Position numbers and translations under genes: made by a program. Below, piece by piece: positions 1,775 to 52,571 of a DNA stretch of 64,000 bases. The stretch is from Oopsacas minuta (lineage: Eukaryota > Animalia > Porifera): assembly GCA_024704765.1 (NCBI GenBank), contig JAKMXF010000111.1, positions 1,256,619 through 1,320,618 of the forward strand, given 5' to 3'. Every line of letters begins with the position of its first letter. Within the stretch, counting starts at the first letter, position 1. Below the pieces are notes generated by a model. That model made no database searches. It was given only the letters and a program-made list of their open reading frames with translations, and was not told the origin of the DNA.

Positions 1775-3353
1775 TTATGAAGATTGTTTGAGATCTTCAG
1801 GACAATCTGGTTGATTGAAGGGATGTGCTGCTTTGAATGCCTCATTCTTTTCCAGCTCTTCTACTATTCTACATATTGTTGGATAAGGTTCTACCTCTAC
1901 TTTGAACCTAAACGTAGAAATAATTATGGGGTTAATTCATTTGCAGAATTATTAATTGGATATTTCATATTTTGAAAGACAATTTTGACTCGAAATTACT
2001 AGAAATAATCCAAATATTTAATCGGTTTGACAAAAACTACTCAGATAGTTTATGAATTAACTCTCCACATTGATATGAAAAGCAAGAAGTATTGATAACA
2101 AAACGTTACGACCTACCTAGTACTCGGATACAAAGAAAATTGTAGTATGTATATTAAAATTAGTAATATAAGCAAAGTTTGATAATTAAAGTCTACAAAT
2201 ACATCACAATTACAGTACAACCTCGTAAGTACGTACGTCAAGAGATTTCAAAAAGGTACTTATCTGTACTCTGAAGTAAGTACGTCTCGTCCAAAGTATT
2301 TCATTTTGAATTATATTTACCTAATTTCACTATACATTCACAAGTACTAACGAGGTTTACGTACTGTGCTTACCTTGCTGCATTGAAGAACTGAGGTACT
2401 AGACACAGGTCAGCCATGGTTATCTATGTAAAATAGATTAAACAATATATATAATCATTCATACTGTGCAGCGTGCCGAATCTTCTATACTATACTATAC
2501 TATACTACAGTGGTTATACATTTGTTTTTCGTCTTTCATTATTGTTGAAATTTTGTTGAAGCAAGCTGACAAAACAAACATCCTATATGTAACAAATATA
2601 CTACTACACGTGATCACTAAATTTGTTAGATCGCTGTTAGGCCTTCCTAAATATTGATTCGACAGTACATAGGAGCAGTTGCAGGTTTTTCTACGAATGT
2701 TTGGGAGAATTAGGATTGTTCACGGATTAGTAATTATCCCTGTTATCGTATAGTTGATCAGAGCATATTTGATTTGTTGTACTATCCGCTCTTAATGATA
2801 CAACTACAGACAGTACAAATATGCACTGTGATTACTAATATATTCAAAACTCAATTCAACTGACGATTATTATACGTACAGAGATTAAACTTAATTAATG
2901 CAAATAACTAGGGGAATATTATTTAATAATTAACAACTATATGAAGTATGAACTCATATTAGATCATCTAGCAGGACAAACTATTGCTCTGGTGTATGAT
3001 GTTAAATTTTCCGAGGTTAAGCAAATACCTGATACTTTGAAAAGCTTATGATTAATCATAATACTTACTTCGTTTCCAACACAGTATTTGCCAGCAGTTT
3101 CTTTCAATATTGCCTCCAGTGCTAATAAGAAATATTTAAGGTATTAGCAAATTTATGGAAATATAAAACTGTCTTACAAGAATGCACATGGCATTATCAA
3201 GAAATTGAAGAATTCTAGATAATCAATAATTACGTAATTATAAGACTACTCAAAGGTTAATACTTAGTACTTACCATCAAATCCATGTTTAATCCAGTAA
3301 TGTCCCCACTCAGCGCTGCCATCTTTGCCAATCTTATTCAATACACGAAGATT
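1775..3353 (-). other. GSTZ1: GSTZ1 exons 6-9 (3' block)
   Basis: Four short exons 3275..3353, 3069..3121, 2374..2423 and 1775..1907 with canonical splice sites, encoding the GST-zeta C-terminal helical domain. Confidence 0.92.
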
Positions 3354-6300
3354 CTAAATACATAATACACAAGGTCATGTAAAGAATTACTTTCTCATAA
3401 TTACATATGTTCTAGGTAGTTTTGAACATTAGGAATAAATCGCTAATAACGATCTCCAACTTGACAATTGTAATGCTCACCATGTTCATACAATAATTTA
3501 TCTAAGCATAGAATGGATTAGTAGTTTCTTCCAGCTTCCATAAATCGCATGAACTAATAGTTAGTGAAATTAAGTTTAATTGAAATTCAAAAGAGCTACG
3601 AATTACACTGTTTTATACAACCATTATATAATTATTACAAAACAATACAACAATAAATCAATACTTCAATCCAACTTATTCTAACTAATAAAATTACAAA
3701 ACTTTCATAAATGAAGTCATTTCTTGTAGGAGAAATTCCTAATTAACTTCTTCAGTTGGACCTGCATCTAACAAAACGATTCGTCAGAGGTAGCTAACAT
3801 CGATGAGATTTCCTGGAAACTAGGTCTGATCTCTGCATTTATTTGCCAGCACTCTAGCATTACTGAGAATATTCCTTCCGGGCAACCAGTGGGTCGATCC
3901 ATAACATCTGAATTAGCATATGCCTGCAATACATCTTCGTTACTATACCCAGGCCACGGCTTCTCACCTAGAGACCAGATCTCATAAAGCGTCATCCCGA
4001 AAGACCAGACATCCGATTTCTCCGAGTAACGCTGGTAAAAGATAGCTTCAGGTGCTGTCCACTTGAGAGGGATCTTACCTCCCTTTGATGTGTAATAATC
4101 TCCTTCATCTCGGAGCTGTCGAGACAGGCCGAAGTCTGAAATCCGACAAGTGAGGTCTTTAGCTAACAACACATTGCGAGCAGCTAAATCTCGATGAATA
4201 AAGTTTTTGGAAGAGAGATAAGTCATGCCCGAAGCAATCTCTCTTGACAGCTTCAGGTAGAGAGAATACATCTGGGAACGTTGTAGAGTAGATTTGCGGA
4301 GTACCACTACGAATTTTAGAAGTTCTATATGCATTAGCTCAGTAACTATCATGAACGGTTCTGTAAGACTAACAATTCCGAGTAGACGGAGTACATTAGG
4401 GTGTGAGAATTGACCCATAATGGCTGCTTCCTGCAGGAAAGTAAGCTTCAATTCTATGGTGGATGAATCGTGGAGAGTCTTTATAGCCACAAGAAGAGGT
4501 TTGTTTGCCTTAAAGGGGTTGGATTCCATTCCTGATGTGTGCCAGAGACCCTTGTACACAGCCCCAAACTGACCTGATCCTATTTGTTCCTGTCGCTCAA
4601 TAGCACTCACAGCAATTTCGCGATATCTCATATCGGACATTTGATTGAATAGTAGACTCAGGTTCTTAGGAGGTTCCAAGTATATACTCCCCTGCTCGAA
4701 AAATGTATCGGATTTCTGTGATAATTGTCTTGAAGCTGATCCATCTGCACTTTCATACACACTTTCAGACCTCAATTCATATCTTGGCACAACCATTGAA
4801 CTTCCAATATAAGAGCATTGACTCGCTTCTTCATAAGTCTGATACAGGTCATTAACATCATCTGATATACCTAACTCTCCGTATATGTTCTCGTAGGATT
4901 CTGGAGCTGTCTTCATAGCAAATGGCGGTAGTATTTGACCCTGTTCATTAATACTGGAATAAGTAGGATTAGGAAAGTTGAGATTAAAGTCTGTGCTTTC
5001 TACGTGAGGATTTACTTCTGATTTCGGACTCCTATATACCACTTCATTCACGGAACATTCTGATGGAACTAATTGTATATCTTGTGGGTTGACCTCAGCA
5101 TATATTTCATCTTGGGCAGGTCTATTTCCTTTGGATTTATGAGTTCGAGTTAGGAGCAGAAAGAACAGGACAACTACCAGAATTACTATTACAATAATAA
5201 TCACAATCACGACAATAGGAACTGCGTATACTATTGGAAAGGTTATAGCTTCCACAACAGGCCCTGTAGAAACATCAGTAAGAATTGTTTTTGACGTTGA
5301 TTCTAATTGTATGTCCCGACAGGTATTTCCAATGGATCCAGATTTGCATTCACAAATACCATTATTACAAGATTGATTAGGTTTACATTTAGGTTCACAT
5401 TGAAGAAACTGACAATTCGGATAAAGAGGATCACATTCACAAACTCCTTCATTGCATATTTGTGTTTCTCTACATTTAGGAGAACAAGCTTTGGTCTCAC
5501 AACTATCACCGTAATACATGTGAGTGCATTCACAGGTACCATTTGAGAGACAATTACCATCATTCTGACAATCTGGTTGACAAGATAAATTCTGACAACT
5601 ATCACCATAATAAAGACCAGGGCATTCACAGGTACCATTTGATGTACAATTACCATCATTCTGACAATCTGGTTGACAAGATAAATTCTCACAACTATCG
5701 CCATAATAAAGACCAGTGCATTCACAGGTACCATTTGATGTACAATTACCATCATTCTGACAATCTGGTTGACAAGATAAATTCTGACAACTATCACCAT
5801 AATAAAGACCAGTGCATTCACAGGTACCATTTGATGTACAATTACCATCATTCTGACAATCTGGTTGACAAGATAAATTCTGACAACTATCACCATAATA
5901 AAGACCAGGGCATTCACAGGTACCATTTGATGTACAATTACCATCATTCTGACAATCTGGTTGACAAGATAAATTCTGACAACTATCACCATAATAAAGA
6001 CCAGGGCATTCACAGGTACCATTTGAGAGACAATTACCATCATTCTGACAATCTGGTTGACAAGATAAATTCTGACAACTATCACCATAATAAAGACCAG
6101 TGCATTCACAGGTACCATTTGATGTACAATTACCATCATTCTGACAATCTGGTTGACAAGATAAATTCTGACAACTATCACCATAATAAAGACCAGTGCA
6201 TTCACAGGTACCATTTGATGTACAATTACCATCATTCTGACAATCTGGGTGACAAGATAAATTCTCACAACTATCGCCATAATAAAGACCAGGGCATTCA

Positions 6301-9300
6301 CAGGTACCATTTGATGTACAATTACCATCATTCTGACAATCTGGTTGACAAGATAAATTCTGACAACTATCACCATAATAAAGACCAGGGCATTCACAGG
6401 TACCATTTGATGTACAATTACCATCATTCTGACAATCTGGGTGACAAGATAAATTCTCACAACTATCGCCATAATAAAGACCAGTGCATTCACAGGTACC
6501 ATTTGATGTACAATTACCATCATTCTGACAATCTGGTTGACAAGATAAATTCTGACAACTATCACCATAATAAAGACCAGTGCATTCACAGGTACCATTT
6601 GATGTACAATTACCATCATTCTGACAATCTGGTTGGCAAGATAAATTCTGACAACTATCACCATAATAAAGACCAGGGCACTCACAGGTACCATTTGAGA
6701 GACAATTACCACCGTTCTGACATCCTAATGGACATAATATATCTTCACAAGTATCTCCACTGTACCCACTAGGACAGTAACACATACCAGCGTGACAACT
6801 ACCGCCATTCTCACAATTATTAATACACTCACATTTTTTATTGTTGACACAGACGCCGGTAGCTGGACATGGGTTCTCATCATTACAATTTTGACATGTG
6901 ACTTTGAGCAATTCAAAGCAATCATCTACCACTGAAAACGTACATTCGGATAAATGTAATTCTGTCCCAATGCAATCAACCTTGACTCCACTTGTCGCTT
7001 CACCCTGTTCCCAACTTTCTTTAGCACTTGGTCTATCCCTACTTAGACAAAATACTGACGATTCATTCAAACTCCAACCCGAAAAACAAACGTCGGAATA
7101 TGTATCCCCATTCTCACAAATTTGTAGACGCTTGCCAGCTCTCTTGGTTTGTCCATAATTACATGAACTCGAAGTTTGCAATACGACAGTACCAGCAATT
7201 AACAGAAAAGCAAAAACTAACATATTAATATAATAGTATTTGTATATTCTATATGTATTTATATAAATTGGCCCTAGATAGTTGACTGTAATAGAATACT
7301 CTCTCTCATCCAATAATAGTGTTACTAAAAATAATTACTTTAATACTAGATTTGAGCATAATAAATGTCAAATATAATTATATATATATTAGCCTTCGGC
7401 TCGCAAACAAAAATTCACATACGTACATATGAGCAATTTGTGAAATTCAGATTCAGCATACTTGGTATATATATATATATATATATACCCTTGTGTAGTC
7501 ACTGACAGCAAGTTTCTATGTATAATTTAGATTTCGTTAGTTGTTTACATTCATAAAACAACAAATAAATATAATCATCTACAGTAGAACGCGGATAACT
7601 GGATAACTCTCAGTTTATACGTATAGTCGAGGAGAACATAGCCAAAATAATGCGTACTAATACGATTTTTGCTGAAAGTGATAAATAGGAGTATGTCAAT
7701 GCAGAATCCAGCGGGTGACACCTTGGAAGTCTCCTGATTCTGCACTTATACACTTTCAGCAAAAACTACTACTGTAATAATTCTTCTTCCAAACAAAATC
7801 TCAAATCACCGCCTGTGCCCACGTAATTTCCAGCATTTCAAGATTTTTATATTATTTGTTTACTTTATATTCATAAAATCAACAATAAATTTACATATGA
7901 GAAATTTAAGGATGCCAAATTCGGATTCAGCGTACTTAATTAGGGGCCGTTCAATGTTACGCAACTCAAAATTCTCTACATTCTGACCCCTTCCCCTCCC
8001 TATGTCATGCCTTTTGACAGTTTTTGTAATACAAAAAGAATGAGACTGTTACGCCTTGTATACCACCCCCTCTCCTTGGAGCGTTACGTAACGTTTGAAC
8101 GACACCTTACCCTTATACGTCTGTTGAGTCCGTGATAACATGTTGAAACCTAATCTCGAGCATGCTATTGAATTGTATATAGAAATGTATGAAAATATGA
8201 TTAACTACCTAAAAGGTGAAAACTATACACATTAGAATCTCTTCACATGTTAGGTACACATCTAGACGTCACAACGAGTATAAATGCCAAATTTGGTGTC
8301 TTAATCTCTAAAGGTGTGAACAGGAGAGTGAACACACATATACACACCAGTATATACATATATATATATATATGCCAAGTCAAACATTTTAGTACTGAGC
8401 CACTATGTGATATATTATATCTCAGAATTACGAAATTTTGACGAATTATATAACAGCATACTACACTTCCTTGACAACCGAGAAAGAGACAATAATTGAG
8501 ATTTAATGTAATATACGAACCCGGGGTATACAAGATTCATGAACGGACGCTGGTGGTGTTGATTTTAGACGATGAACGTGAATGAACTAAACGTGCGTCA
8601 ATTTGAGACGGATTGAATTGCATTAATTCAGTCTGTTCGTGAACCTTTCATTCCCTGAAAAGTACTAGATTCATAATCCGATATATTAAACTTTGCTAAT
8701 ACGCAAGCTTGATATTAGAGGAATTATTTCCAATACAAAATAGACTACAAAATAGAGTCTCTGAAAACTTGCTATTAGTCGAATATTGGTAATAGACGAA
8801 TTGCTAATAGGCGAACACCACTATTAATAATACATAATATAATATCTAAAACATTGGCTATTAATTCATTTAGAACTTCACCAAAATTGTACCTACTCTG
8901 CAAGTATTAGGCAAATTAGATATTCAATTAAGCATTATACTTGAGAGGGAACAGAATTTGTATTGATTTGTATATAATATTTTTTATATTTTCCAAGCTG
9001 ATCAGTGTAATTAGCGCTAGGTTAATTCCTCAATCTTTATGTTATCAAAGTATCTGACAGCATATGGAGTTATTGATGTAGGTTGGGTATTATGATCTTT
9101 GGTATCATGATGAAATCGTGAACGCATAAAATCCCATGGAATAGCATAAGAATAGACTATTGAGCGAGTTCTTTTTGGCGTTTTTGTTTCTACATCAGAT
9201 GACTCTTTGTTAGGAAAGTTTGAATTACTATATATTCTCTGTACTCTATGCGATTGGTTACACTTCACTTTCTTAATTGCTATACAGAATAAAGTACACA

Positions 9301-12300
9301 AACACACGCACAGTACGCCACAACCACAACCAACCATAAAAGTTGTAGATATTATCACACATAAGATTAACCAATTATCTGGTATTGATGTAATGGAATT
9401 AGGGATCAAACAATCTGAATTAAACAAATTATTACCAAAGCTATCATCAGAAGAATGATCAAAGCATACACAGGTACAATTTGTTAGACAACTACCATTG
9501 TTCTGACATTCTTTAAGACATAAGATTCTCTCACAACTATCACCATAATAAAGACCAGGGCATTCACAGGTACCATTTGAGAGACAATTACCATCATTCT
9601 GACAATCTGGTTGACAAGATAAATTCTGACAACTATCACCATAATAAAGACCAGTGCATTCACAGGTACCATTTGATGTACAATTACCATCATTCTGACA
9701 ATCTGGTTGACAAGATAAATTCTGACAACTATCACCATAATAAAGACCAGGGCACTCACAGGTACCATTTGAGAGACAATTACCACCGTTCTGACATCCT
9801 AATGGACATAATATATCTTCACAAGTATCTCCACTGTACCCACTAGGACAGTAACACATACCAGCGTGACAACTACCGCCATTCTCACAATTATTAATAC
9901 ACTCACATGTTGTATCGTCGACACAGACGCCGGTAGCTGGACATGGGTTCTCATCATCACACATTTGACATGTGACTCTGAGCAATTCGAAGCACTCATC
10001 TACCACTGAATACCTACATTCGGATAAATGTAATTCTGTCCCAATGCAATCAACCTTGACTCCACTTGTCCTTCCACCCTCTTCCCAACTTTCTTCAGCA
10101 CCTGGTCTATCACCACTTAGACAAAATACTGACGATTCATTCAAACTCCAACCCGAAAAACAAACGTCGGAATATGTATCCCCATTCTCACAAATTTGTA
10201 GACGCCCATACCTACTCTTGGTTTCTCCAAAATTACATGAACTCGAAGTTTGCAATACGACAGTACCAGCAATTAACAGAAGAGCAAAAACTAACATATT
10301 AATATAATATAGTTACAATAATTTTCCTTACTCCTTACTTATATATTTTCAGTATTATGATGTAATATTCTTTCAATTCATAGTTCCTAGGCCATACATG
10401 GATGCGTCCCAAAGCACATTTAACCGAGCACATATTAAATACAATATACAAGTAACTCATAATTTGAGAATAACATAAGTAAGCATATGTAAGACGAATT
10501 GAGAATAACATACGAAAACATCTTGTAAGCAAAATGTAATCCACTCTAATAATGCATCCAGTACAAATCTGCAACCAATATACATTTATGGCATAACTAC
10601 CGTGAGATTGCACGGGGAGACACATTTTAATTGTTCATCATTTTAAGGAGCGAATAGTCAGTGCCTACTACACACAGTCAACTCCCGTAATATAGAAACC
10701 CCAAGGGACCGTGATAATTACAGTCAGGGCCGCCTATTATCAACCCACAAGGGACCAAAAATCTTGTTCATAGAATTAATACATATAGAGACTTCATATT
10801 AAGGGAATTTAATTTAATACAAATCCTATGTGAATGATTTCTGGCTTGGTTCATAATAAGAGAATGTTCATAATGAGCACCTTTACTGTACTTCGATATA
10901 AATAGGATTCGATATAGCCGATGAAACTCTTAGGGATTATGTATATATGTATAATTTCTATATATCCGTGTTCGTTAATACGAAAGTTGACTGTGCTATC
11001 ATAAAAGTTAATTAGATACTTAAAGAATCCATAATAACGTAATTCACATAAATATCTTACTTATCAATAATCTTGATTTGTTTGCAAGCTCTTATATAGA
11101 TTAACACTTAGTCTAGGATCGTTCCCAATAATCAAGACAGGATCAGTTTGGGGTACAGGGGGCGGTAACTCTATTTCAATTAGCATACTCAATACTTTAG
11201 AAAAGGTTGGCCTTTCTGATTTTTCACTTCTCCATGTTTCTATCATTGTTTTGTATACATCTCGATTACAGCCTGTAGGTGGAGGTAACTTTGTCCCTAC
11301 TGATAGAGCCCTGACTATTTCCTCATTCGTAGAGTATGGCCATGGTCTCATTCCCAATGACCAGATCTCGTACATTGTCATGCCGAGTGACCACACATCA
11401 CTCTTTTCAGAATACTTTTGATAGAACACAGCTTCTGGAGCGCACCATCTGAACGGGATCTGTCCTCCCTTTGAAGTGTAGTCACCTTCCATACCGAACT
11501 GACGCGTCATTCCAAAGTCTGCAATACGACAAGTTAAGTTTTTAGATACCAAGACATTTCTTGCAGCAAGGTCGCGATGAATAAACTGCATTTCTGCTAG
11601 ATACTTCATACCAGCTGTGATATTGAGACAGAACTGTAGTAAGAGTGAAGGTAACAGCTGACATTTATCAAGTTGGGATTCTTTCAGCTTAAGCAAAAGT
11701 TCCCTCAGCTCAGATTTGAGTAGCTCTGTAATCATCATGTAAGGAGAACTACTAACTACACCAATTAACCTCAATACATTAGGATGTTTGAATTGGTTTA
11801 ATATCATTGCTTCCTTTATAAACGCATTTTCTGCTTCATTATTTGTATAATCTTTTAATTTCTTAACAGCTACGTCAATAGTACCATCAGGTGAACTATA
11901 TTGTGCACTGTAAACGATTCCAAACTGCCCTTGTGCTATTAACTGTCCAATTTTTAATTTGTCTTTATTTACTTCGATATTAGGATCATGACGTAGAGAT
12001 TTGATATACCGTGGAGGCTCAACGTATATCTTCCCAGAAGATGTGAGATGGTGATTCTTACTCACTCCTCGCTTAGAAATAGACGCATAATATTCTGTAT
12101 CAACATAACCGTCAAGGATGGAGGTATAAAAGTCTTCTTCCTTATGACAATCAAGTAGATTCGATTTACTTTTGGTAGTTGTAGGAGATTTTGGTTGGAT
12201 TGGTGATTCATATTTCCTTGAAGAATTTGCGTATGCTGTTAATGATGAATTAGAGGGTGGGACAGGAGGTATGGCCATCTGTGGTATAGGGTCAATAGAG

Positions 12301-15300
12301 TCAAAACTCCCACCAGCGGATTCAATTCTAGGTCTTCTCTCATAGCTTAGATTTTCGCTGGGATATGAATCGAAGCTGTCATCATCCATGAGCGGAAAAG
12401 TTCTATCCGTGTGGTCATTATTCGCTAAGGTGCCATAACGATTACTTGAATGAGAAACACTTCGAATATCACCATGATGTGTATTTTTAAATCTCATACA
12501 TTTGATTAAGACGAGTATTATACTGAATAGAGCGATCACGATAAGGATAACTGATAGGACAGATCCCACTACTATGCCTATTTCGTTATTATTCTGTTGA
12601 GATGTACCATCTACATCTAATTCACATTTAGGTTCTAGACTATTGTGGCATAAATGACAATAATCAGATTCATTAACGTAATTACATGTAGATGTGAAGT
12701 TGCAATATGAAATATATTTATTTCCATCACAATTCGTTAAAACCGGTTTCAGATTATTATTTGAGCTCTCATAACTCTCAACTGATCCAATATGAACCAT
12801 CCCTAGACAGAATTCATTGGTAGAGATATCGCCCAATCCTTCATCATTGAAACATAAAAACTTCCATTCGAGGGTCCTATTATTACTATTCAAACATATT
12901 TGAATAACATTAGATAAGTTTCCTATACTAGTTACTCTTTTGTCTCCGTCTCTACTACAACTTTGAGCGAATGTGTATGATAGATAAAACGTTAATACAG
13001 AAAGAGACAGCAAATAAACAAGTAAAATATTGGAATACATAAAAGCGAGAATCCAATTTCTTCCAGTACGATATTATTGATAAAGCAATATTATCCATGA
13101 TTATGAGAATATCTACCAGAAGAGTGATATATGATATGTACTTCTGAATAGATGTACCTATGACTATCAATTGATGCCTCCAAATGCAGTATAAATGAAA
13201 AAGAATACTTTGGGGCCTCTCTACGTGAGGCGTATTTCGATCATTTTTACTCAAAATATTTCAGTAATAACAAATTCCATAAGCTGGATCCTGACATTAA
13301 ATTGAATAATAAAATTGGACTCGTAACAGAGCAAAATGGATAAATAATAGATTAATAGAATAAAGAATAAATGTGAATCATTTTCAGATGCTGTGAATTT
13401 ATGTTCTATCAAAATTGATTGAGCATTTTATAAATTCAATATTCGGTATCAGGCTTATTCATTAGAAGATTAAAAAGTTAGTAATCAAGAATCCAAAGAA
13501 CACTTGGATATTTGCCTAAAAGTTGGTCTCATTTTTGGATCTTGCCTCCATGTCTCTAACATGATTTGGTACATTTTTTCTGGACAACGGACAGGTTGTG
13601 AGAGGGTGTCTCCGTTTGTAAGAGCTTGTATAACTTCCTCATTATTACAACCTTCCCATGGCTTATCTCCCAGTGACCAGATCTCGTACAGTGTCATACC
13701 AAATGACCACACATCAGATTTCTCAGAGAATTTATTGTAGAACAGAGCTTCTGGAGCTGTCCAACGGAGAGGTACCCTTCCACCACCTGAAGAGGTGTAG
13801 TAATCATTGTCACAATCTATTCCTCGTGACATACCGAAATCTGCCACACGTACACTCAAATCTTTCGCTACTAACACATTCCTAGCAGCTAAATCTCTAT
13901 GAATGAATTTCTTATCAGCTAGATGCTCCATTCCAGCTGCTATCTCCTGACTGAACTTCAGCAGTAGATTTTGAATATTTAGTTTGTCTGAAGAAGCAGT
14001 AGGTCTAATTTGGAGTAAGAGTTGTCTCAGTTCTGTCTTGAGGAGTTCTGTTACCATCATCCATGGTTCTTGAGTTGTCAGTATACCGATAAGTCTGAGT
14101 ACGTAGGGATGATGGAACTGAGTGAGAATAGCAGCCTCCCTCATGAAATCCATTTTGGTATCTTTGTTAGTACCCACAGTTTCCTTCAACGTTTTGATAG
14201 CTACAGGAATGTCTCCCTTCCCTGTACTGTATTTACCTCTGTACACAACACCGAACTGACCAGAAGCGAACTTTTCTCCTATCTCTATATCTTCTGCTCT
14301 AATCTCATGGATATATGCATCTACCATGTGTTTCAATTCAGGGAAGTTCTTAGGAGGCTCCAAATAAGGGCTATCAACTATAGTGCTCTTGTATAAAGAG
14401 TTAACTGATACACCAAAATGAATAGAGTCTATCAGCTGATTTGGATCAATCTTCTGACTTAGTAGGTTAGCATACATACTTGGTTCTATGACCTCCCCAC
14501 CCACTATACTCATATAGTGTTCTATGTTATTATATTCTAGCAGAAAATGAGTTGGATCTTGATATGGCGATGGATCTTGTGAAATGGTGTGATATATATT
14601 TGATGAGTTTCGAAGTGAATTGATAGGAGAATCACAATATATTTCAACCACTTCAGAATAAATTACTTCTTCTCCAGCAACATTGTCACAAGTTGTAACT
14701 GTAGGGTTATTGGTATTTAAATCTCTCCCTTCAAGATTATCAAGAATTAAAGTACGTGGCTCTTGCAAAAGCTTATCTGTGGATTTCTTCCTGCAAGTAA
14801 GACAAATAACTAATATGATGAGGACAGACAAAATAATGGATATACTGATAGCAATAACAAGACTGATGACCAAACCTATGATACTAATGTTATTATCGAC
14901 AGCTGACTCAGAGCAATTTCCTTGATTTAACCCAGATGAAGTACAGTCGATAGTTGGCAAAATAGTTTCTGTCGTAGACAAAATAGATTCTGTCGTAAGC
15001 ATAATAGTTTCTGTCGTAGGCATAGTAGTTTCTGTCGTAGACAAAATAGTTTTTGTCGTAGGCAAAATAGTTTCTATCGTAGGCATAGTGGTTTCTGTCG
15101 TAGGCATAGTGGTTTCTGTCGTAGGCATAGTAGTTTCTGTCGTAGGCATAGTAGTTTCTGTCGTAGGCATAGTAGTTTCTGTCGTAGACAAAATAGTTTC
15201 TGTCGTAGGCATAGTAGACTCAACATTAGTTTGGTTAGAAGTTGGTATTTGTGTAGATATGGTCGTACTAATTGTTGTTAATGGTTGAGTTAATTGTTGG

Positions 15301-18300
15301 GTGTCGTGAGAAGTAGTACCTACAGTAATATCATGAATACTACAATCAACTCCACTAATTCCAGTAGGACAGATACACTCGCCTAGAAAACAGAACCCTC
15401 CATTCATACAAGCCTCCTCACACACACATCTTCCTTCCTCACAAATTCCAGCATTACAATCGGTTTCTGCGTTACTGCATCGTCTGCAACTAAATTCAAC
15501 AGCAGACACATAATGACAATCCTCCATTGTTGTACTATGACTACAATCCAATAGAGACATACTGTCACTACTGCAGTCTAGATTTATTAATTTAACCATA
15601 CCATCGCTTATAATATTAGAGGCACCTAACCCTGAGTAATCTGACAAGATGTAACCAGCTCTTCTACAATACACATATGCCTCACTACTACTCCAACCTT
15701 CAAAACACACAAAGGTCCAACTTTTAACTCCATTATTCTCAAAACAAATCTGTATTACATCGTTTCTATTTGCAGCAGATACCACCCTCTCATCTCCCTC
15801 TACGTCACAAGAATCGGAGAATACAACTCCTGAGGTTAGAAGCAGAAGCTGGACTACTCGTAAAATCCTCTGGTAAAAGTACATAGAATATTAATATGTT
15901 AAATAAATTTGTAGTCCTAATATATTAGGTAATTCAATCAGGCTAGCGCTAGGCAATGAGATAAACCATGGCCTGGGTATACCATTTCAAGGCTAGGTAT
16001 AATGATGTACTATTAATACAAGAATTGAGAATCCGTTTGGGAGAGTTCTACCGAATTATACAGAAATTAATTAAACAGACAGATTTCTAATACATTTTAG
16101 TATTTAAATGTTTTATCAGTAAAGCCTTGATTTCCCGAACAGCAGGGAACGTACGGGAATTTGGCGAAATAGAATCTGAGATTTGAGCTTCTGACTTCTA
16201 TACTAACTATAGTACTAATCCTTTCGAAAGTTATGGTGATGTTAGACACATATTAGTATAAATAAATCTTCCAAGTTGCAACATTCTTGTCAAATATTCC
16301 AACTTCCGAGTTACAAAATCCTCATTTTCTATAATCCTCAAGCATTGAATGTCAAATATCAAAATACAGTAAGACACTATTCAGTTATTCGAATACGTTA
16401 ACACCAAAGTTGAAATTTAGAGACGAAAGGTGTTCGGATAGCCGAGGGTGTACCGTATCCAGCAACCTAATTGGTTACGACATTTATGGAGTTGTTGGTT
16501 AGAAAAATTAATCATTAATACAACTGAAAATTTGATTGCATAATTGTCCGTGTTGATTCTACCATATTAAATAGCATTCCATGAAAATATCTCTAAAATG
16601 CAAACGGCTAAGTATATTAATTACAGAAATTTCACTGAATAATATTACGTATAAGTAACAATTCTAAGAATATAATTAATATAATGCTACATACGCGGAA
16701 TTTATAATTTCGTATTCGTTTGTTGGGTCATGGATTCATTATTAGATTTGACTGAAGGGAAATATACAACAACGGAATCAGAAAACGTGTACTCTAATCA
16801 TTTCTTAAACAAAATAATTATTAGATTATATATGTTTCCGTAAGTTTTTTCTTTAGTTTTCTTGTAATAATTGCGTAGAACATTGCTGGGTTATATGTAA
16901 GACTGTTGTTCAAAATATGATAAATAGAACAAATTTCTGTTTTTGTTATGATAATTATCTGAACACAGTTAAGAACATAGTTATAACAAATGAAACTTGC
17001 ACTAGTTGTATCTCTCTTAATTATATTTGCATTATGGCAGTGCAGAAGTCAAGAGTGTAGCATGGTGAATGAAATAGAAGATTTACAATGTAATGAATTG
17101 AGAGAAGTTAGGTCAGATGCTATATCATCATCATCGAATTGTCGGTCATTCATTACATATCGAAATAGTAGTGAGAATTGTCAAGATATCCCACACGAAG
17201 ACGAAGATTATCTAGATGGGATAATAGTAATCAAATGCACTCGTAATGATGGTATAATCTGTTTGAAAAGTGAAATGAAATTTAGGTGTACATCGTGTGA
17301 AGATGACGCGAATGGTCGAGGTTTTTGTAATTGTAATTGTATGGCTGAGTGTGAGGTAAGTGATGAAAAAGAGACATGGGACATAATATCTACAGTAAAT
17401 ATAACCCAACAAGTTATCTCAAGAATAAGCACTAATCAACCAACAAGCCCAACTATAAATGAAATAACAGATGCACCAACAGCGAATAATACCACAATAA
17501 GGAACAACAGTAGCCCAACTCCTGATCTCCCATTAAATACAAAGCAATACTTAGCTTACGTATTACCAATAGGTGGAATATTTATCATATTACTGATAGC
17601 AGTGCTAATCCCTATCATTGTGTGTTTGATATGTAGAAGGGTATTAAGTAAAGGTAAAGATCCAGAATTAGATACACACTCGATGGATATAAGCCAGTTA
17701 TACATAAATCCTCATATCAGCTCTACGAATGAATCTAACTATTCCACGATATCAGAAATAGAACCCAATAATACCTGTAATTCTCTCAGAAACCACTCCA
17801 ACCAAGATACAAGTAATGGTATAACATCGAATAGACTATCTGAAAATATGTATCAAGAGATCAGATCTAGCCTCATATCAGAAGCAACAACTCCCGGGGA
17901 AATGATACAAAATGTATTATACAATTTCGGTGCTACCAATGAGACAGATATCTCAAATAACTTTTATCATGTCTTGGTAGCTGGTGAAGTAATTCAACCA
18001 AACATTTATGATCAAATAATAGAGGTTAATTCTTTATACTCGAAAGATAATACAAGCAATGAGCAGCGAGATTTTCATAACTACATCGAGCCCCCTAAGA
18101 ACTTCCCTGAATTGAAACACATGGTAGATGCATATATCCATGAGATTAAGGCAGAGGATATAGAGATAGGAGAAGAGTTCGCTTCTGGTCAGTTCGGTGT
18201 TGTGTACAGAGGTAAATACAGTACAGGGAAGGGAGACATTCCTGTAGCTATCAAAACGTTGAAGGAAACTGTGGGTACTAACAAAGATACCAAAATGGAT

Positions 18301-21300
18301 TTCATGAGGGAGGCTGCTATTCTCACTCAGTTCCATCATCCCTACGTACTCAGACTTATCGGTATACTGACAACTCAAGAACCATGGATGATGGTAACAG
18401 AACTCCTCAAGACAGAACTGAGACAACTCTTACTCCAAATTAGACCTACTGCTTCTTCAGACAAACTAAATATTCAAAATCTACTGCTGAAGTTCAGTCA
18501 GGAGATAGCAGCTGGAATGGAGCATCTAGCTGATAAGAAATTCATTCATAGAGATTTAGCTGCTAGGAATGTGTTAGTAGCGAAAGATTTGAGTGTACGT
18601 GTGGCAGATTTCGGTATGTCACGAGGAATAGATTGTGACAATGATTACTACACCTCTTCAGGTGGTGGAAGGGTACCTCTCCGTTGGACAGCTCCAGAAG
18701 CTCTGTTCTACAATAAATTCTCTGAGAAATCTGATGTGTGGTCATTTGGTATGACACTGTACGAGATCTGGTCACTGGGAGATAAGCCATGGGAAGGTTG
18801 TAATAATGAGGAAGTTATACAAGCTCTTACAAACGGAGACACCCTCTCACAACCTGTCCAATGTCCTGATCAAATATATCAAATTATGCTTGAGACCTGG
18901 AAGCAAGATAAAGATTATCGCCCAAGTTTCTCCCAACTGAACAGAGAGCTGAATTTACCTATATGATTTCAGTCATCAAGCTACTTCTCAATATTATTAA
19001 ACACTTGATTGTGTAAATCAAGATTTCTGGAATAACATTTGTTATGATATTCAAGTTGATTGTAAATTATGTCAATACTCAAAACTTAATCTTGCAGCCT
19101 TTGTACTCAATTTCAAGTAATAACACCTTGAAACACATTCGCTCTCTCATTTTTAACGCCCTAGGTTTGAATTTTTGAAAAATGGCTATAAACTTATAAT
19201 TCATTTAAACCATGGATGCCTAGTTAAGCTATATGTATATCTAACATGGTTAATATACAATATTTTGTAAACTAATAATATCATAATTATATTATTAGGA
19301 ATTTAGGACCTTGGTCATTAGTTGCATGGGAAACGGACGCTAGAGTTAGGTAAACCTCATGCTATACACATTCCATTCCATCGATGAATTTATTTTCCTA
19401 TACAGCCAGGGGCGTAGGGCCCCAAACAAATGTAAGGGTTCACAACTTCAGACCAGACGAGTTTTTAATTAAATTCCTCTGACTTTACTAATTATCACTA
19501 AGAAATAAGAATATATACTAAAGTTTCCAAAATATCCAAAGTAGTCAGAGAATATATTGATGACCCTTAATTTAGGGTAGGGACAGATATTTCACTTAAA
19601 CATGCGTTTTGGGGTGATTTTATTTTATATTGAGAGTGAGATCGCGAGTGAAGAGAGCCGAAATTTTACCGTTTGAAATTCGATCCAAATATTATGTATT
19701 TAGATTCCAATTTTGATATTTTCAAATCTATATCTCATATATTTACCATATTTACAACCAGGGTAGGATATATGTCCGAGATGCCTGAGCTGCACTCCCA
19801 GTCTGCCAGCTGGATATTTTCTATCTGTCTTTGTAGCAATTATTATTATTATTATTATTATTTGCAGAATGTACAAAATAGAAATGATAATTATAATATC
19901 GCAGATAATCAGTATTTTGTAATTTGTACACATAAACATGAATAATAAAGATACCATCTTCATTTGATTATAAGTTCTTAGATAAGCTTACGTGCTACAA
20001 CATTTTAAGAAAGATTTTTTGTCTACAAAGTATTTTTTGCGATAATTAGCCAGTAAACTAAGTTATCAAAATGATGATATGCAATACTATAATTTACTTA
20101 AAATTGTGTCGGAATTTCATCTCGTATATTCATCGAATTTTCATTAGTTTGAAAACTTTGAAAATATTAAAATATATAATCGCAGCGTAAAATTTGCAAT
20201 TATATTAGTTGATGCAATTCCATAGAGTATTGCACAACAGCGTATGTTCTTTCTAATTGTAATCAAATGTATTTTCAACATGTAACTTGAGTAATAATTA
20301 TTACTATCTGTCAGACAGTGAGGAGACTGTTTGGCACCAGGGGTTACGTCTCTGGAGAGAGACAATTAGATTCAATTTCACTGAGGCAACATCATGAATC
20401 ATGTCGATGAGTATTCGATTGCCACTGAAATCGAATATTTATTAAAATATGTCTAGGATTATTGGAAAATTATAATATTCTAACAAAAATCTGTAAATAT
20501 TTACGTCTAGAACAAATAGTTAATTCCTTTAAATAAATTATTTCTGATAAATATGGTCTCATAATCATAGTAACTTAAGTATGCGAAACCAAAGTAGAAA
20601 GTTTCAAGAAATAGACTATCAGATTAAGATTATATAAGGGAATATTCATGCATTTCGAAGTGACAATGTGTCCCATCTTTTTCGACACATTATACAATAC
20701 TTGATTAATTCACTAATTCATGAAATTTTCTTGTAAATCATAATTCAGATGAACATTTCTTGGTAAAAATTTGATTACAATATTAACAGTATGAAGTTCT
20801 ACAATATTTCTGAGAAAATATGCCAAGAGTTTATTAAATGATTAGATAATACACATATGTGTATATATATATAATAATAAGCTTTCTCAGAAAACAGTAA
20901 GTCTGGTTATAGTTGTTGATCTATAAAGCCATTTCAACTTAGTCAAGCTCTGTAATACCACAAATTATGCTAAATATTCGCATAATAATTATTAGACTGA
21001 ATGGAATCATGGCCACATAATAATCTGTGTGGTATAACAACATAGTGGGAAGATCAACGAATTCTAATTTCATAGAGATGAAATTCAATGAGTGTACAAA
21101 TAATTGTGTTTTTATCAAGAATTGTGTCTCTGAGTCTGCCCTATAAATGCAGTAGGATTGTCAATAATATGATTTTTCAAACAATTAAACAGCACATACA
21201 TTGAGATGCATATACTCAATATTCTAAGTGTAATCCTATTAGGGATAACCTTTTTGGGATTGGGACGATGCGAATTATGTGACAAAGTTGGAGAGATCAG

Positions 21301-39300: not shown

Positions 39301-41158
39301 GGCTCGCGTTGTGTGAATGAATATCGCTACGAAAGTGATAATAATGTATCTTGGTTGAGGATATGTGCAGATGAAATGAGTGAGCATACTGTAAGCCTTT
39401 TGTGTAGAAATCTTCTGGATCTTAGTACAAACTCAATAGAGATAAATGATTCTGAATCTCCAAAGAATCGAAATGAAAAAGTGCGCATAGATTGTGATGG
39501 AGATGAAACCAGATTAGAAGAGTGTAATGTTGAAATAGTCAATTCCTGTAAAACAATCCTGCATGACAAAGTATGTGTTAACTGTAGCCAAAACTCCCAG
39601 TGTAATGGATCAGCTGTGTGTGGAAGCGGTGGAGTGTGTGTTTGTGAATTTCCTAATTTCGGTGCAGATTGTGAGTTGAGGAACTGCTCCCCTCCCTGTA
39701 ATATTAACCAGACTTGTAATAATCAAACTGGAATATGTCAGTGTAAAGTTCCATTCTATGGAAATAACTGCGAATTGAGAGGATCAGTTTGTCCAGCTCA
39801 ATGCTTGAATGGAGGTTCATGTAACTTTGCTGATGGTACTTGTCTATGTGCTAATAGTTACCATGGAGATGTATGTGAGTTACGAGTATGTATTCCAGCC
39901 TGTAAGAATGGAGGTGTGTGCATATCCCCTAATCACTGTAAATGTGTTAACGGTACGTATGGAGTGTTATGTGAAGAGGTGGACTCAGATATATTTCGTC
40001 ATGGATTAACGGTTGGTGTCTCACTTGCTGTTATAGTTTTTTTCATTTTAGTTATCATATGCATGATAATTTTGCTATGTATACAACTCAAAAAGCTAAT
40101 GAAGTATAAATTGGATGGAATCTCTATTCGCAAGAAGAAAATACAAAAAGAATTGAAAAGAGAAGTTCAAATGGAAGATTACGTAAATATTCCCAAAGAA
40201 ATACATAGGCAACAAGCACATCTTACACAAATACAAGCTGTCATACCGAATCTGAACCGAAACAGATTATCAGAAGTATACTACGCTATTCCGCAACAGC
40301 TAAGAAATACGGAATACAGAGAAGAGGGTTACTCTACTATGCGGTTACACTACGATAACGTAATCGCTGCAGAATCATGCCAGGATATAGAAAGCGGACA
40401 GCAAGAGCAGAGAACAGAAACTCCAGAATATATTGAGCTGCAATAGATATTCTGTCACATAGAGTGAGTAGATTAGTTTAGTTTAAGAAAGTTTAGGTTG
40501 ATACAAGATTTTCTATGTTCTAATTAAAATATTAATACAGTCTACATCTGGTAACTAGAATGCCCGTTAACTCGAACGAATATTCAGTTCACTTCGTTGT
40601 ACTTTTAGTACTTATCGCATCCGTTAACTCGAACATTCGATTTTTCCAACAGATTTTCAGGAATCGAATTACTGAATGTGAACTATATAGTATATTAATT
40701 AAATCTCCATTTGTGTCTGTGTGTCTGTGTGTCTGTCACGCTCCCATATAGAGAACATATAGGTTCAGTTCATAAAATCCAGAACTAAATACTACACAAC
40801 ATAACAACAACAAAACAACATTGTACTGGGGTAATCGAGTATACTGATTCCGAATATAATATCGTAAACAACATTTCCTAAATATTAGTTCACTTTTGGA
40901 GACATAAAGAAAGCAGATTTAAAGTTTATGGCAGTATCATGTTTGCTACGGTTAAGATGAGACCAGGGGGGGGGTCGACAAAGTGCGGCCCCTCATAGCA
41001 AGTTTGGGCAGCGCGGGCAAGCTTCAGATACTCACATAAACTAGCTATCTTCGCTGTAATAACTAATTCCATAACCTTATTTGCCACCCGAATCTTCTTG
41101 TTTAAGTACTTTTGTATATTTAACATAGCCTTATTTAAAATTTCAATTATTTCTTTAC

Positions 41159-50807: not shown

Positions 50808-51015
50808 GATATGCTATGAAGAATATTTTAATCTATTCTAATTCATGCCTATACACTTAGAAATTTTATACGTCAATTTCAATCAAATGTGAGTAATTAT
50901 TGACAAATATTAACACAACACACGCATACGAATCGATGCAGTTAGTTAATTCAATAATTTATTACCAGAAATACATTTAAAAGTATATAACCAGTATGTA
51001 AATTCCTGGAACTAA

Positions 51016-52149: not shown

Positions 52150-52571
52150 GTTGTAAATGCTAATAAACACGTAATGCAATATAATTATAATATCGTTGCA
52201 ATATTCTTATATAAATAGTGTCCCTGTGCATACAATGGCTTATGAAGTCGTTGAAATATGATACATGGATTACTAAAGAAAGTGTACTGGCCTTACGATC
52301 TGTATAATTTGATACTTACAGATCATAAAGATATAAATAGCTAGCCATAATTCAATAAGATGTGAGTTCAAACTTGTAAGGAATGGTCATAAGGAAGTAG
52401 AACAGGATATCCAATATGAGATTTGGAAATAAGTAATGAGATATCATAGCCATAGAAATAAGTATTCAAGTAATACATGAAAATTTATTATTCACAAATT
52501 ACATGTGTGAATCAAATATAACCATCTATCTATCACTAATATTCATGCATGGAAAAGTAAGTAGAAAATAT

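What the first reader, a model, noticed from the sequence alone, without database searches (positions are those of the whole stretch)
6834..10297. R1 versus R2 ligand-binding tips: 23 amino-acid replacements but only 1 silent change
Seen: comparing codons 1-130 (R1 6834..7223, R2 9908..10297) by hand, I count 23 replaced residues in patches (YGQTKRAGK/FGETKSRYG, RDRPSAKESWEQGEA/GDRPGAEESWEEGGR, TF/RY, QNCND/QMCDD, NNKK/DDTT) and a single synonymous codon (F103 ttt/ttc). The following EGF DNA is identical and all cysteines are kept. Similarity ends about 12 nt upstream of the ATG. Established: dN far above dS at surface patches is the signature of diversifying selection in MHC, KIR and allorecognition genes. 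Inference: the SRCR-like tip is the specificity determinant, and the pair is one kinase-linked and one kinase-less receptor with diverged specificities.
Basis: partly seen in the sequence, partly recalled or inferred. Interest (0 to 1): 0.87.

Follow-up and report, generated by a model that had tools for sequence, protein, structure and literature searches.

The report
Fast-evolving tips of paired sponge receptors
Two neighbouring receptor genes of a glass sponge, one with and one without a tyrosine kinase, share a front end copied from one to the other, yet their outermost SRCR domain differs at 23 amino acids, half of them at the spots that also differ in a similar gene pair of another sponge, which suggests selection for different binding partners.

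Summary
The window is Oopsacas minuta (glass sponge). R1 (7223..3768, minus strand; SRCR + EGF array + TM + tyrosine kinase) and R2 (10297..9017; SRCR + EGFs + TM, no kinase) share a ~0.79-kb 5' tract. In codons 1-130 I count 32 nucleotide differences, 23 replacements and 1 purely synonymous codon. All cysteines are kept, the next 196 nt are identical, and reads confirm both tips.

For this pair alone, dN/dS is 2.6 (NG86) to 4.3 (ML), with p between 0.002 and 0.06 depending on the test. That is suggestive, not "far above".

A syntenic locus from another sponge adds support. R2's TM and tail are ancient, so the shared tract is most likely a gene conversion from R1. An independent tandem pair there (A/B) differs at the same columns (12 of 23, p=2e-5). 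Cross-validated hot-site dN/dS is 9.4 and 3.2, and a joint site-class test gives p=3e-6.

The signal rests on multi-hit codons and vanishes without them. A third-paralogue donor elsewhere in the genome could not be excluded. Surface exposure, alleles, expression and ligand are untested.

Verdict: probable diversifying selection on an SRCR tip within a concertedly evolving receptor cluster. This is a new member of a known kind.

The parts
3768..7223 (-). R1: intronless receptor tyrosine kinase, 1151 aa (signal peptide, SRCR, EGF array, TM, kinase)
   Evidence: Translation. Pfam EGF_TEN 1.4e-102 and PK_Tyr_Ser-Thr 2e-83 at aa 876-1143. VAIK, HRDLAARN and DFG are present in the translation.
9017..10297 (-). 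R2: kinase-less membrane receptor, 426 aa (signal peptide, SRCR, ~4 EGF, degenerate EGF, Cys-rich TM, 85-aa tail)
   Evidence: Translation. Pfam finds EGF only, no kinase. It is a called gene in GCA_024704765.1.
6891..7163 (-). R1 SRCR domain (codons 21-111)
   Evidence: Pfam SRCR 26.2 bits. AF2 pLDDT 91. Foldseek top hits are CD163, M2BP, CD6 and DMBT1 SRCR domains.
9965..10237 (-). R2 SRCR domain (codons 21-111)
   Evidence: Pfam SRCR 30.5 bits. PDB phmmer hits are to SRCR chains.
7131..7157 (-). Variable cluster 1 in R1 (codons 23-31, beta1 and the beta1-beta2 turn). R2 counterpart: 10205-10231.
   Evidence: 12 nt differences, including a 9-nt run where every base differs. Secondary structure.
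6996..7040 (-). Variable cluster 2 in R1 (codons 62-76, loop after the helix and the following hairpin). R2 counterpart: 10070-10114.
   Evidence: 9 nt differences giving 6 replacements. Codons 62 and 68 also differ between A and B.
6882..6941 (-). Variable cluster 3 in R1 (codons 95-114, last hairpin of the SRCR and the hinge). R2 counterpart: 9956-10015.
   Evidence: 9 nt differences, including the only silent codon, F103. Codon 112 reads N/M here, M/K in A/B, and K in the organism-B contig.
6834..6845 (-). Variable cluster 4 in R1 (codons 127-130, turn of the first EGF-like hairpin, NNKK vs DDTT). R2 counterpart: 9908-9919.
   Evidence: 4 nt differences giving 4 replacements. All four columns also differ between A and B.
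6454..7235 (-). R1 side of the shared ~0.79-kb tract (from -12 to about +770). R2 counterpart: 9528-10309.
   Evidence: Ungapped DNA comparison. blastn gives 92.7% over the 411-nt tip part. R2 diverges from R1 after nt ~770.
9020..9373 (-). R2-specific TM and cytoplasmic tail, older than the shared tract
   Evidence: 49% identical to a 144-aa ORF at the syntenic position of locus L002 from another sponge. Shared motifs: GCGVLC.CLCT, SHRVQRIYSN, YSYAIPW, YAVR. pN 0.36, pS 0.59.
3795..4598 (-). R1 tyrosine kinase domain
   Evidence: Pfam PK_Tyr_Ser-Thr at aa 876-1143.
5304..6833 (-). R1 EGF array (teneurin-type EGF, 96-bp units)
   Evidence: Pfam EGF_TEN and translation.

Best explanation
R1 and R2 are adjacent intronless receptor genes in a glass-sponge (Oopsacas minuta) cluster of SRCR/EGF receptors. 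Segments in this cluster are repeatedly homogenised by gene conversion.

R2 is an old kinase-less receptor type; its TM and tail are conserved in another sponge. Its first ~0.79 kb (from 12 nt before the ATG, through the signal peptide, SRCR and first EGFs) was overwritten fairly recently by its kinase-bearing neighbour R1. Tract dS is about 0.02-0.04.

Against that near-identical background, about 20 positions of the SRCR tip and the hinge behind it have been driven apart by selection for amino-acid change. They form four clusters: the beta1-beta2 turn, the post-helix loop and hairpin, the last hairpin and hinge, and the first EGF-like turn. Selection may have acted as new substitutions after the conversion, or against later conversions that would erase the differences.

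R2's tip ended up 8 charge units more acidic than R1's. The two receptors would therefore bind different ligands, or the same ligand differently. R1 would signal through its kinase. R2 would act through its conserved Tyr-containing tail, or as a decoy or partner.

Shown: the gene structures, the SRCR fold, the counts, the clustering, the synteny, and the shared hot columns. Inferred: the direction of the conversion, selection as the cause, and that the tip sets specificity.
For: (1) Counts: 23 replaced codons against 1 silent codon. NG86 omega 2.58, ML omega 3.8-4.3. P(<=1 silent codon) is 0.002-0.01 for 32 random hits.

(2) Same-age control inside the tract: tip pN is 0.094 against pooled tract pS of about 0.04 (Fisher p=0.02; p=0.001 with purely silent codons only).

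(3) Control from the same cluster: the 822-nt R4/R5 kinase conversion tract has 7 silent and 7 replaced codons, against 1 and 23 here (p=0.0017). The bias is therefore not a general mutational property of the cluster.

(4) Independent replicate: in syntenic locus L002 the tandem genes A and B differ at 23 columns, 12 of which coincide with the 23 R1/R2 columns (expected 4; p=2e-5).

(5) Cross-validated hot sites: R1/R2 at A/B-defined columns give omega 9.4 (p=2.6e-5). A/B at R1/R2-defined columns give omega 3.2 (p=0.004). In A/B, silent divergence is even across hot (0.13) and cold (0.11) codons.

(6) Joint two-pair site-class test, M1a vs M2a: LRT 25.4 (p=3e-6); 17.6 (p=1.5e-4) without the block at codons 28-31.

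(7) The replaced residues are almost all polar, charged or small. No cysteine or core residue is touched. In distant SRCRs these positions fall in more variable columns (entropy 2.48 vs 1.90 bits, p=0.03).

(8) Conversion background: R2's tail has an orthologue in L002, both flanks are syntenic, and two more clean conversion tracts lie in the window.

(9) The changes are not confined to R2. The organism-B contig shares R2's state at 8 of the differing sites and R1's state at 4.
Against: - For this pair alone the excess is marginal: Fisher p=0.06, and the SRCR proper (codons 21-112) gives p=0.14-0.18.
- The site-class signal drops to LRT 0 when all codons with more than one changed base are removed. 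Such codons are over-represented: 6 observed vs 2.4 expected, and 9 vs 3.4 in A/B. A multi-nucleotide or templated mutation process could therefore mimic selection.
- The 9-nt run of differences at codons 28-31 does not look like point mutation.
- Overall omega for A/B is 0.83, and between species it is 0.36-0.5.
- R2's surviving old EGF unit is also replacement-rich relative to R1's units. Codon-position patterns therefore cannot exclude unconverted remnants.
- No allelic variation was seen in the single sample. There is no RNA evidence that R2 is expressed, no solvent-accessibility calculation, and no ligand.
- The rest of the genome could not be searched for a third paralogue.
Confidence: 0.55

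Rival explanations
1. Mosaic gene conversion without positive selection. R1-type and R2-type ectodomains diverged long ago. Conversion runs through the conserved core-coding segments, where homology is good, but stalls at the already divergent loop-coding segments. The four clusters are then old unconverted islands, and silent sites look young only because most of them lie in converted DNA.
For: - Conversion is frequent in this cluster, and the R1/R2 tract is itself a conversion onto an older R2 gene.
- Local divergence inside the clusters (15-44%) is in the range of R2's surviving old EGF unit against R1's units (~31%), which is also replacement-rich.
- NG86 silent divergence inside hot codons is 0.15, against 0.014 in cold codons for R1/R2.
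- The run at codons 28-31 differs at 9 consecutive bases.
Against: - It needs at least four separate islands of 12-60 nt, with many isolated single-base differences between identical stretches of 3-14 nt.
- Third codon positions are the least changed (13/12/7 for positions 1/2/3).
- The A/B pair has even silent divergence in hot and cold codons, yet omega is 3.2 at the independently defined hot columns.
- Under pure neutrality, hot-site pN should not exceed pS.
Confidence: 0.2
2. The patches were imported by short-tract conversion, or by templated multi-nucleotide mutation, from one or more further SRCR paralogues elsewhere in the genome. Each patch would then be one event, not several selected substitutions.
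For: - There is an excess of multi-hit codons in both pairs, and a complete 9-nt replacement at codons 28-31.
- The omega>1 signal vanishes without multi-hit codons.
- Earlier notes list other SRCR-RTK loci on other pieces of this genome.
- R1 itself is absent from the protein collection, so protein searches are blind to part of the genome.
Against: - No donor was found in the 64-kb window, in L002 or in L004.
- The 12 other receptor genes of the cluster have tips only ~20-26% identical, too divergent to supply homologous flanks.
- The exhaustive HMMER search found nothing above 45% identity apart from R2 itself.
- Outside codons 28-31, the number of multi-hit codons is about what the density of hits predicts (my estimate).
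- Imported tracts should carry silent differences too.
Confidence: 0.13
3. Relaxed constraint. R2 is a truncated, kinase-less by-product that is decaying, and the replacements are neutral.
For: - R2 lacks a kinase and its last EGF is degenerate.
- Omega=1 is not firmly rejected for the pair alone.
- There is no expression evidence.
Against: - Neutral decay cannot make the tip diverge about ten times faster than the signal peptide and EGF DNA of the same tract (32 differences in 390 nt, against about 3 point differences in ~450 nt).
- The ORF is intact and all cysteines are kept.
- R2's tail motifs are conserved across species.
- The organism-B contig suggests changes on the R1 side as well.
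- The same columns differ between A and B, which both carry kinases.
Confidence: 0.07
4. Assembly or haplotype artefact: the two tips are alleles or mis-joined copies of one gene.
For: The flanking coding DNA is near-identical.
Against: - Both tips are reproduced exactly by contigs of three runs, at single-copy depth in two of them.
- Contigs join each tip to its own distinct upstream DNA (records 3, 8, 11, 16, 17 and 24).
- The 3' parts of the two genes are unrelated.
Confidence: 0.01

Closest known systems
Vertebrate paired receptor families (KIR, Ly49, SIRP, LILR/PIR)
   Same: These are tandem genes with near-identical ectodomains but different signalling ends. The ectodomains are kept alike by gene conversion, with replacement-rich divergence concentrated at ligand-contact sites. 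(From my own knowledge, not tested here.)
   Different: The fold here is SRCR plus EGF, not Ig or C-type lectin. One partner is a receptor tyrosine kinase rather than an ITIM or ITAM-adaptor receptor. R2's tail has no recognisable ITIM or ITAM (read). No ligand, polymorphism or opposing signalling has been shown.
Geodia cydonium RTK and sponge adhesion molecules (SAML/SAMS)
   Same: A sponge receptor tyrosine kinase and kinase-less membrane proteins share closely related ectodomains. The RTK ectodomain is polymorphic and has been linked to self/non-self recognition (PMC11926128).
   Different: Those ectodomains are Ig-like, and their polymorphic sites are spread over the domains rather than clustered. 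Here the domain is SRCR, the variation is between paralogues, and it is clustered.
Expanded tandem SRCR gene families of Amphimedon queenslandica and sea urchin
   Same: They are tandem arrays of SRCR-containing genes, often with EGF, regarded as immune-type receptors (PMC10855680).
   Different: That survey does not mention kinases, hexactinellids, gene conversion or site-wise selection (0 occurrences of 'kinase', 'gene conversion' and 'hexactinellid'). Those genes have introns; these are intronless.
Canonical SRCR domains with solved structures (CD163, DMBT1/SALSA, M2BP, MARCO, CD6)
   Same: The fold is the same (Foldseek probability 1.00, TM 0.5-0.6). The C2-C7, C3-C8 and C5-C6 cysteine positions and the G-x-E motif after C5 are present.
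   Different: The two acidic residues after the second conserved Cys ('CDD'), which I recall forming the cation/ligand site in DMBT1 and CD163, are F-S in R1/R2. There is an extra N-terminal Cys pair (C21, C36) instead of the group-B C1-C4 pair. Sequence identity is only 17-28%.

Membership tests
SRCR domain (Pfam PF00530) | Profile score at or above Pfam's gathering threshold | tested here: met
   R1 tip 26.2 bits and R2 tip 30.5 bits, against a cut-off of 26.1. The R1 score is borderline.
SRCR domain (Pfam PF00530) | SRCR fold (beta-sheet cradling one helix) | tested here: met
   AF2 model pLDDT 91, pTM 0.80. The 50 best PDB matches listed are all SRCR domains or SRCR-containing proteins, TM 0.47-0.62.
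SRCR domain (Pfam PF00530) | Conserved cysteine framework (C2-C7, C3-C8, C5-C6) | tested here: met
   C46, C59, C84, C94, C102 and C110 align with the conserved Cys columns of 25 distant SRCR domains. The disulfide pairing itself is inferred.
Cation-dependent ligand-binding SRCR (DMBT1/CD163 type) | Acidic pair after the second conserved Cys, plus the Glu after C5 | tested here: not met
   R1/R2 read C46-F-S-G-W where the canonical domains read C-D-D/E-x-W. E88 is present. The definition of the motif is from my own knowledge.
Receptor tyrosine kinase (R1) | Signal peptide, single TM, and a tyrosine-kinase domain with the VAIK Lys, HRDLAARN and DFG | tested here: met
   PK_Tyr_Ser-Thr 2e-83 at aa 876-1143. 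The motifs and a hydrophobic TM at aa 660-691 are read in the translation. Catalytic activity was not tested.
Paired receptors (functional class) | Near-identical ectodomains on genes with different signalling ends, adjacent in the genome | tested here: met
   The tips are 83% identical, the first EGFs are identical, one gene has a kinase and the other does not, and the genes are 1.8 kb apart.
Paired receptors (functional class) | Opposing (activating vs inhibitory) signalling, and a shared or related ligand | not testable with these tools
   No ITIM or ITAM is recognisable in R2's tail. The ligand is unknown.
Genes under diversifying selection (MHC/KIR-like signature) | dN/dS above 1 at a defined subset of sites | tested here: inconclusive
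   Cross-validated hot-site omega is 9.4 (p=2.6e-5) and 3.2 (p=0.004). The joint site-class LRT gives p=3e-6, but LRT is 0 once multi-hit codons are removed. The pair alone gives p=0.002-0.06.
Genes under diversifying selection (MHC/KIR-like signature) | High allelic polymorphism at the same sites | tested here: inconclusive
   No variant appears in either tip in the three runs, which are all from one sample of an isolated cave population (PMC10280926). Contigs drop rare variants.
Genes under diversifying selection (MHC/KIR-like signature) | Variable sites lie on one exposed face | not tested
   The tools return no model coordinates. Only proxies are available: the residues are polar, they lie in turns or at hairpin positions, and their columns are more variable in distant SRCRs.

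The most novel reading that the evidence does not exclude
Glass sponges have a true paired-receptor system. A kinase-bearing and a kinase-less SRCR receptor are kept alike by gene conversion, while about 20 surface positions of the SRCR tip are driven apart again and again, independently in different species. This would be an analogue of KIR/Ly49/SIRP built on an RTK, used for microbe or allogeneic recognition in one of the earliest-branching animal lineages.
Probability: 0.25. Interest if true: 0.75.

Novelty: new member of a known kind. Interest (0 to 1): 0.5.

Why it matters
Almost nothing is known about recognition receptors in glass sponges. The Oopsacas genome paper does not mention SRCR, tyrosine kinases or EGF receptors.

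If the reading holds, this cluster shows a familiar vertebrate immune-receptor dynamic in a very different setting. Duplication or conversion keeps neighbouring receptors alike, and selection pushes a few surface sites apart. Here that happens in an SRCR-EGF receptor tyrosine kinase family of a very early-branching animal.

It also gives a short, testable list of candidate ligand-contact positions: residues 28-31, 62, 68, 76, 107, 112 and 127-130. And it offers a natural pair, kinase and kinase-less, for binding and signalling experiments.

Tried and rejected
- Three word-indexed protein searches (R2 region 1-132, R1 region 1-132, and an alignment of both tips) found only R2 itself.
- An exact look-up showed that R1 is not in the protein collection at all, so these blanks do not exclude a third paralogue.
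- A JGI metagenome scan with a five-tip alignment found nothing.
- blastn and pattern searches for patch donors in the window, L002 and L004 found nothing.
- The organism-B contig (X5) would have been the ideal close outgroup, but only 12 of its 28 differences were printed and the reads tool is capped at one call. I used it only qualitatively. It also has 5 gaps and changes at conserved positions (D83, I85), so it may be a pseudogene or another paralogue.
- An ADAR-like origin for the A>G excess (10 of 32 changes) was considered and dropped. The other 22 changes are of nine other types, and the G gain matches the K/N/Q to E/D/G/R replacements.
- A five-sequence M1a/M2a test is significant (p=0.001). 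It assigns only 2.7% of sites, essentially codon 29, to omega>1, and it includes a saturated 2.9-substitution branch. I give it little weight.
- Codon-position composition was tried as a test against 'unconverted remnants'. It failed as a discriminator, because R2's old EGF remnant is equally replacement-rich.
- Solvent exposure could not be computed, because the structure tool returns no coordinates.

Full report
WHAT AND WHERE

The window is part of contig JAKMXF010000111.1 of assembly GCA_024704765.1. That accession belongs to the genome of the glass sponge Oopsacas minuta (PMC10280926).

Between about 3.7 and 44 kb the window holds 14 intronless ORFs. They encode membrane receptors with SRCR and/or teneurin-type EGF ectodomains. 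Seven carry a tyrosine-kinase domain and seven do not.

The finding concerns the two genes at one end of the cluster, both on the minus strand.
- R1 (7223..3768, 1151 aa): signal peptide, SRCR, a long EGF array, a TM segment, and a tyrosine kinase with VAIK, HRDLAARN and DFG.
- R2 (10297..9017, 426 aa): the same signal peptide, SRCR and first EGFs, then a degenerate EGF, a cysteine-rich TM segment and an 85-residue tail without a kinase.

Codons 1-130 align without gaps. There are 32 nucleotide differences in 24 codons: 23 replacements and one purely silent codon (F103). All twelve cysteines are invariant.

The following 196 nt are identical. Up to nt ~768 there are only two silent changes and two swaps between EGF-repeat variants. 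Ungapped identity starts 12 nt before the ATG.

Contigs from three runs of one sample reproduce both tips without a single other letter and link each tip to its own upstream DNA. The pair is therefore not an assembly artefact.

The tip is an SRCR domain:
- Pfam scores are 26.2 and 30.5 bits against a cut-off of 26.1.
- phmmer finds only SRCR chains in the PDB.
- An AF2 model of R1 residues 20-135 has pLDDT 91 and pTM 0.80.
- The model's best PDB matches are all SRCR domains: CD163, M2BP, CD6, SCARA1, DMBT1.

HOW STRONG IS dN > dS FOR THIS PAIR ALONE?

| Test | Result |
|---|---|
| Nei-Gojobori, codons 1-130 | S=83.5, N=306.5, Sd=3.17, Nd=28.83, dN/dS 2.58, one-sided Fisher p=0.06 |
| Pairwise GY94 ML, codons 1-130 | omega 3.8-4.3, p=0.02-0.03 |
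| Pairwise GY94 ML, SRCR proper (codons 21-112) | omega 2.5-2.7, p=0.14-0.18 |
| Tip pN against pooled silent sites of the whole tract | p=0.02 (p=0.001 with purely silent codons only) |
| 32 random hits on R1's tip | 6-8 silent codons expected; P(<=1)=0.002-0.01 |
| Clustering of the differences | longest clean run 92 nt, p=6e-4 |
| Control: R4/R5 822-nt kinase conversion tract | 7 silent and 7 replaced codons, against 1 and 23 here, p=0.0017 |

The sign of the effect is clear. 'Far above' is too strong for one pair of 130 codons.

WHERE THE IDENTITY COMES FROM

The exhaustive HMMER search with the tip found two closer relatives, at 44-45% identity, in ENA assemblies of other samples.

One of them lies in locus L002, on a 648-kb contig, and this locus is syntenic with the window:
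- A gene 57% identical to the window's g3.
- Then a 144-aa ORF 49% identical to R2's TM and tail, with shared motifs GCGVLC.CLCT, SHRVQRIYSN, YSYAIPW and YAVR. Its 5' side is occupied by repeats.
- Then two tandem R1-type kinase genes, A (710 aa) and B (997 aa).
- Then an exon 91% identical to window 1778-1912.

R2's TM and tail are therefore older than the species split. Its first ~0.79 kb, in contrast, is nearly identical to R1's. The simplest reading is a gene conversion, or an equivalent ectopic exchange, from R1 into R2.

Conversion is common here. The window holds two more such tracts between otherwise divergent receptors: R4/R5 (822 nt, 97.9%, inverted) and R7/R13 (382 nt, 100%). The first-stage notes s1-261158 and s1-261175 pointed me to these tracts.

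AN INDEPENDENT REPLICATE

A and B of L002 have tips 82% identical to each other but only 42% identical to R1/R2. They are therefore a separate event that made two neighbouring tips alike.

They differ at 23 of 131 aligned columns, and 12 of those are columns where R1 and R2 also differ. Four would be expected by chance (hypergeometric p=2e-5).

I used each pair to define the 'hot' columns for the other, which avoids circularity:
- R1/R2 at A/B-defined columns: pN 0.289 against pS 0.038, omega 9.4, p=2.6e-5.
- A/B at R1/R2-defined columns: pN 0.315 against pS 0.116, omega 3.2, p=0.004.
- The remaining columns give omega 1.37 and 0.39.
- In A/B, silent divergence is even across hot (0.13) and cold (0.11) codons. 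A mixture of tract ages does not explain that pair.

A joint two-pair site-class model prefers a class with omega>1:
- About 16% of sites have omega about 11.
- The sites are residues 28, 29, 31, 62, 68, 76, 107, 112 and 127-130.
- LRT is 25.4 (p=3e-6), or 17.6 (p=1.5e-4) without codons 28-31.

Codon 112 reads N in R1, M in R2, M in A, K in B, and K in the partial contig of a close relative.

CAVEATS THAT KEEP THE VERDICT AT 'PROBABLE'

- Removing every codon with more than one changed base abolishes the site-class signal. This control is biased against the hypothesis, because it removes the fastest codons.
- Such codons are over-represented: 6 vs 2.4 expected in R1/R2, and 9 vs 3.4 in A/B.
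- Codons 28-31 contain a 9-nt run in which every base differs.
- A multi-nucleotide, templated or short-tract conversion process could therefore mimic selection.
- No donor exists in the window, L002 or L004. The other tips of the cluster are only 20-26% identical.
- I could not search the rest of the genome. R1 itself is missing from the protein collection. Earlier notes list further SRCR-RTK loci on other contigs.
- R2's surviving old EGF unit is also replacement-rich relative to R1's units. Codon-position patterns therefore cannot exclude the idea that the four clusters are old islands that escaped conversion.
- Overall omega is 0.83 for A/B and 0.36-0.5 between species.

WHERE THE CHANGES SIT AND WHAT THEY DO

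In the model the changes map as follows:
- the end of beta1 and the beta1-beta2 turn (residues 23-31);
- the loop after the helix and the following hairpin (62-76, with i/i+2 pairs 66/68 and 73/75);
- the start and turn of the last hairpin and the hinge (95-114);
- the turn of the first EGF-like hairpin (127-130).

The replaced residues are almost all polar, charged or small. In 25 distant SRCR domains the same columns are more variable (entropy 2.48 vs 1.90 bits, p=0.03). Exposure on one face remains untested, because no coordinates are returned.

The replacements are directional. 18 of the 32 changes from R1 to R2 create a G, turning K, N and Q into E, D, G and R. R2's mature tip carries a net charge of -14, against -6 for R1, -6 for A and -4 for B.

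The acidic pair that I recall forming the cation site of DMBT1/CD163-type SRCRs is absent (F47-S48). Binding is unlikely to be of that type.

MECHANISM I COMMIT TO (ABOUT 55%)

- An old kinase-less receptor acquired its neighbour's ligand-binding head by conversion. Selection then changed, or preserved differences at, about 20 surface positions.
- The kinase receptor and the kinase-less receptor would then recognise different ligands, or the same ligand with different affinity.
- R2 would act through its conserved Tyr-containing tail, or as a decoy or partner of R1.
- The rivals are mosaic conversion without positive selection (about 20%), patches imported from a third paralogue or by templated mutation (about 13%), neutral decay of R2 (about 7%) and artefact (about 1%).

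COMPARISON WITH WHAT IS KNOWN

The behaviour resembles vertebrate paired receptors such as KIR, Ly49 and SIRP (from my own knowledge). It also resembles the Geodia cydonium RTK and its kinase-less SAM relatives, which share polymorphic Ig-like ectodomains (PMC11926128).

Tandem SRCR expansions are described in Amphimedon and sea urchin, but without kinases, conversion or site-wise selection (PMC10855680). The Oopsacas genome paper does not discuss these genes.

I found no description of SRCR-EGF receptor kinases of hexactinellids. The phenomenon itself is a known kind.

READS

- I laid 3,851 letters in a single call.
- No run could be shown to be RNA, so whether R2 is expressed is unknown.

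Noticed in passing
window 7761-8400 (between R1 and R2): This is a high-copy repeat. Summed contig depth is 10^3-10^5, against about 100 for flanking single-copy DNA, in all runs including organism B. There are many variant letters and joints. It is probably a transposable element family inserted between the two receptor genes.
   Followed up: no
window 13539-14360 and 18088-18909; 25279-25660 and 39597-39978: Two further conversion-like tracts lie between otherwise divergent receptors. The R4/R5 kinase cores share 822 nt at 97.9% in inverted orientation (17 differences, 11 at third positions; 7 silent and 7 replaced codons). R7/R13 share a 382-nt EGF cassette at 100%.
   Followed up: partly
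window 9020-9373 and L002 4209-4643: R2's cysteine-rich TM (GCGVLCVCLCT) and its tail motifs (SHRVQRIYSN, YSYAIPW, YAVR) are conserved in another sponge. There the ectodomain-coding side is replaced by repeated elements. This looks like a conserved kinase-less signalling module of unknown function, possibly palmitoylated and tyrosine-phosphorylated.
   Followed up: partly
window 3768-7313: R1, a 1151-aa intact receptor tyrosine kinase ORF, is not in the 15-billion protein collection under either start codon. Protein-based searches therefore miss at least some genes of this genome.
   Followed up: yes
window 6854-6970, 9928-10281 (run X1): In run X1 the tip-specific contigs have depth 460-634, against about 91-106 for neighbouring single-copy contigs. 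In runs X2 and X3 of the same sample they sit at about 84-144. This is unexplained. It could be library bias or an admixture of transcript-derived reads.
   Followed up: no
L003 1-9354: This 9.4-kb contig from another ENA assembly carries five copies of the same 162-aa truncated SRCR-tip ORF in alternating orientation, each overlapped by a 56-aa ORF. It looks like a palindromic long-read artefact or a real inverted array.
   Followed up: no
L004 2969-10571: A third sponge sample (ERZ25072740) has an RTK cluster with a single R1-type gene (P0020, 37% identical tip) next to SRCR-TK and TK genes. The number of R1-type copies therefore differs between species (1, 1+R2, 2).
   Followed up: no
window 49012-60239: Ordinary neighbours lie beyond the receptor cluster: an MSL3-type chromodomain protein, a PA-TM-RING ligase, PARG, a leukotriene-A4-hydrolase-like fragment and a TRAF-type zinc-finger protein.
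   Followed up: no
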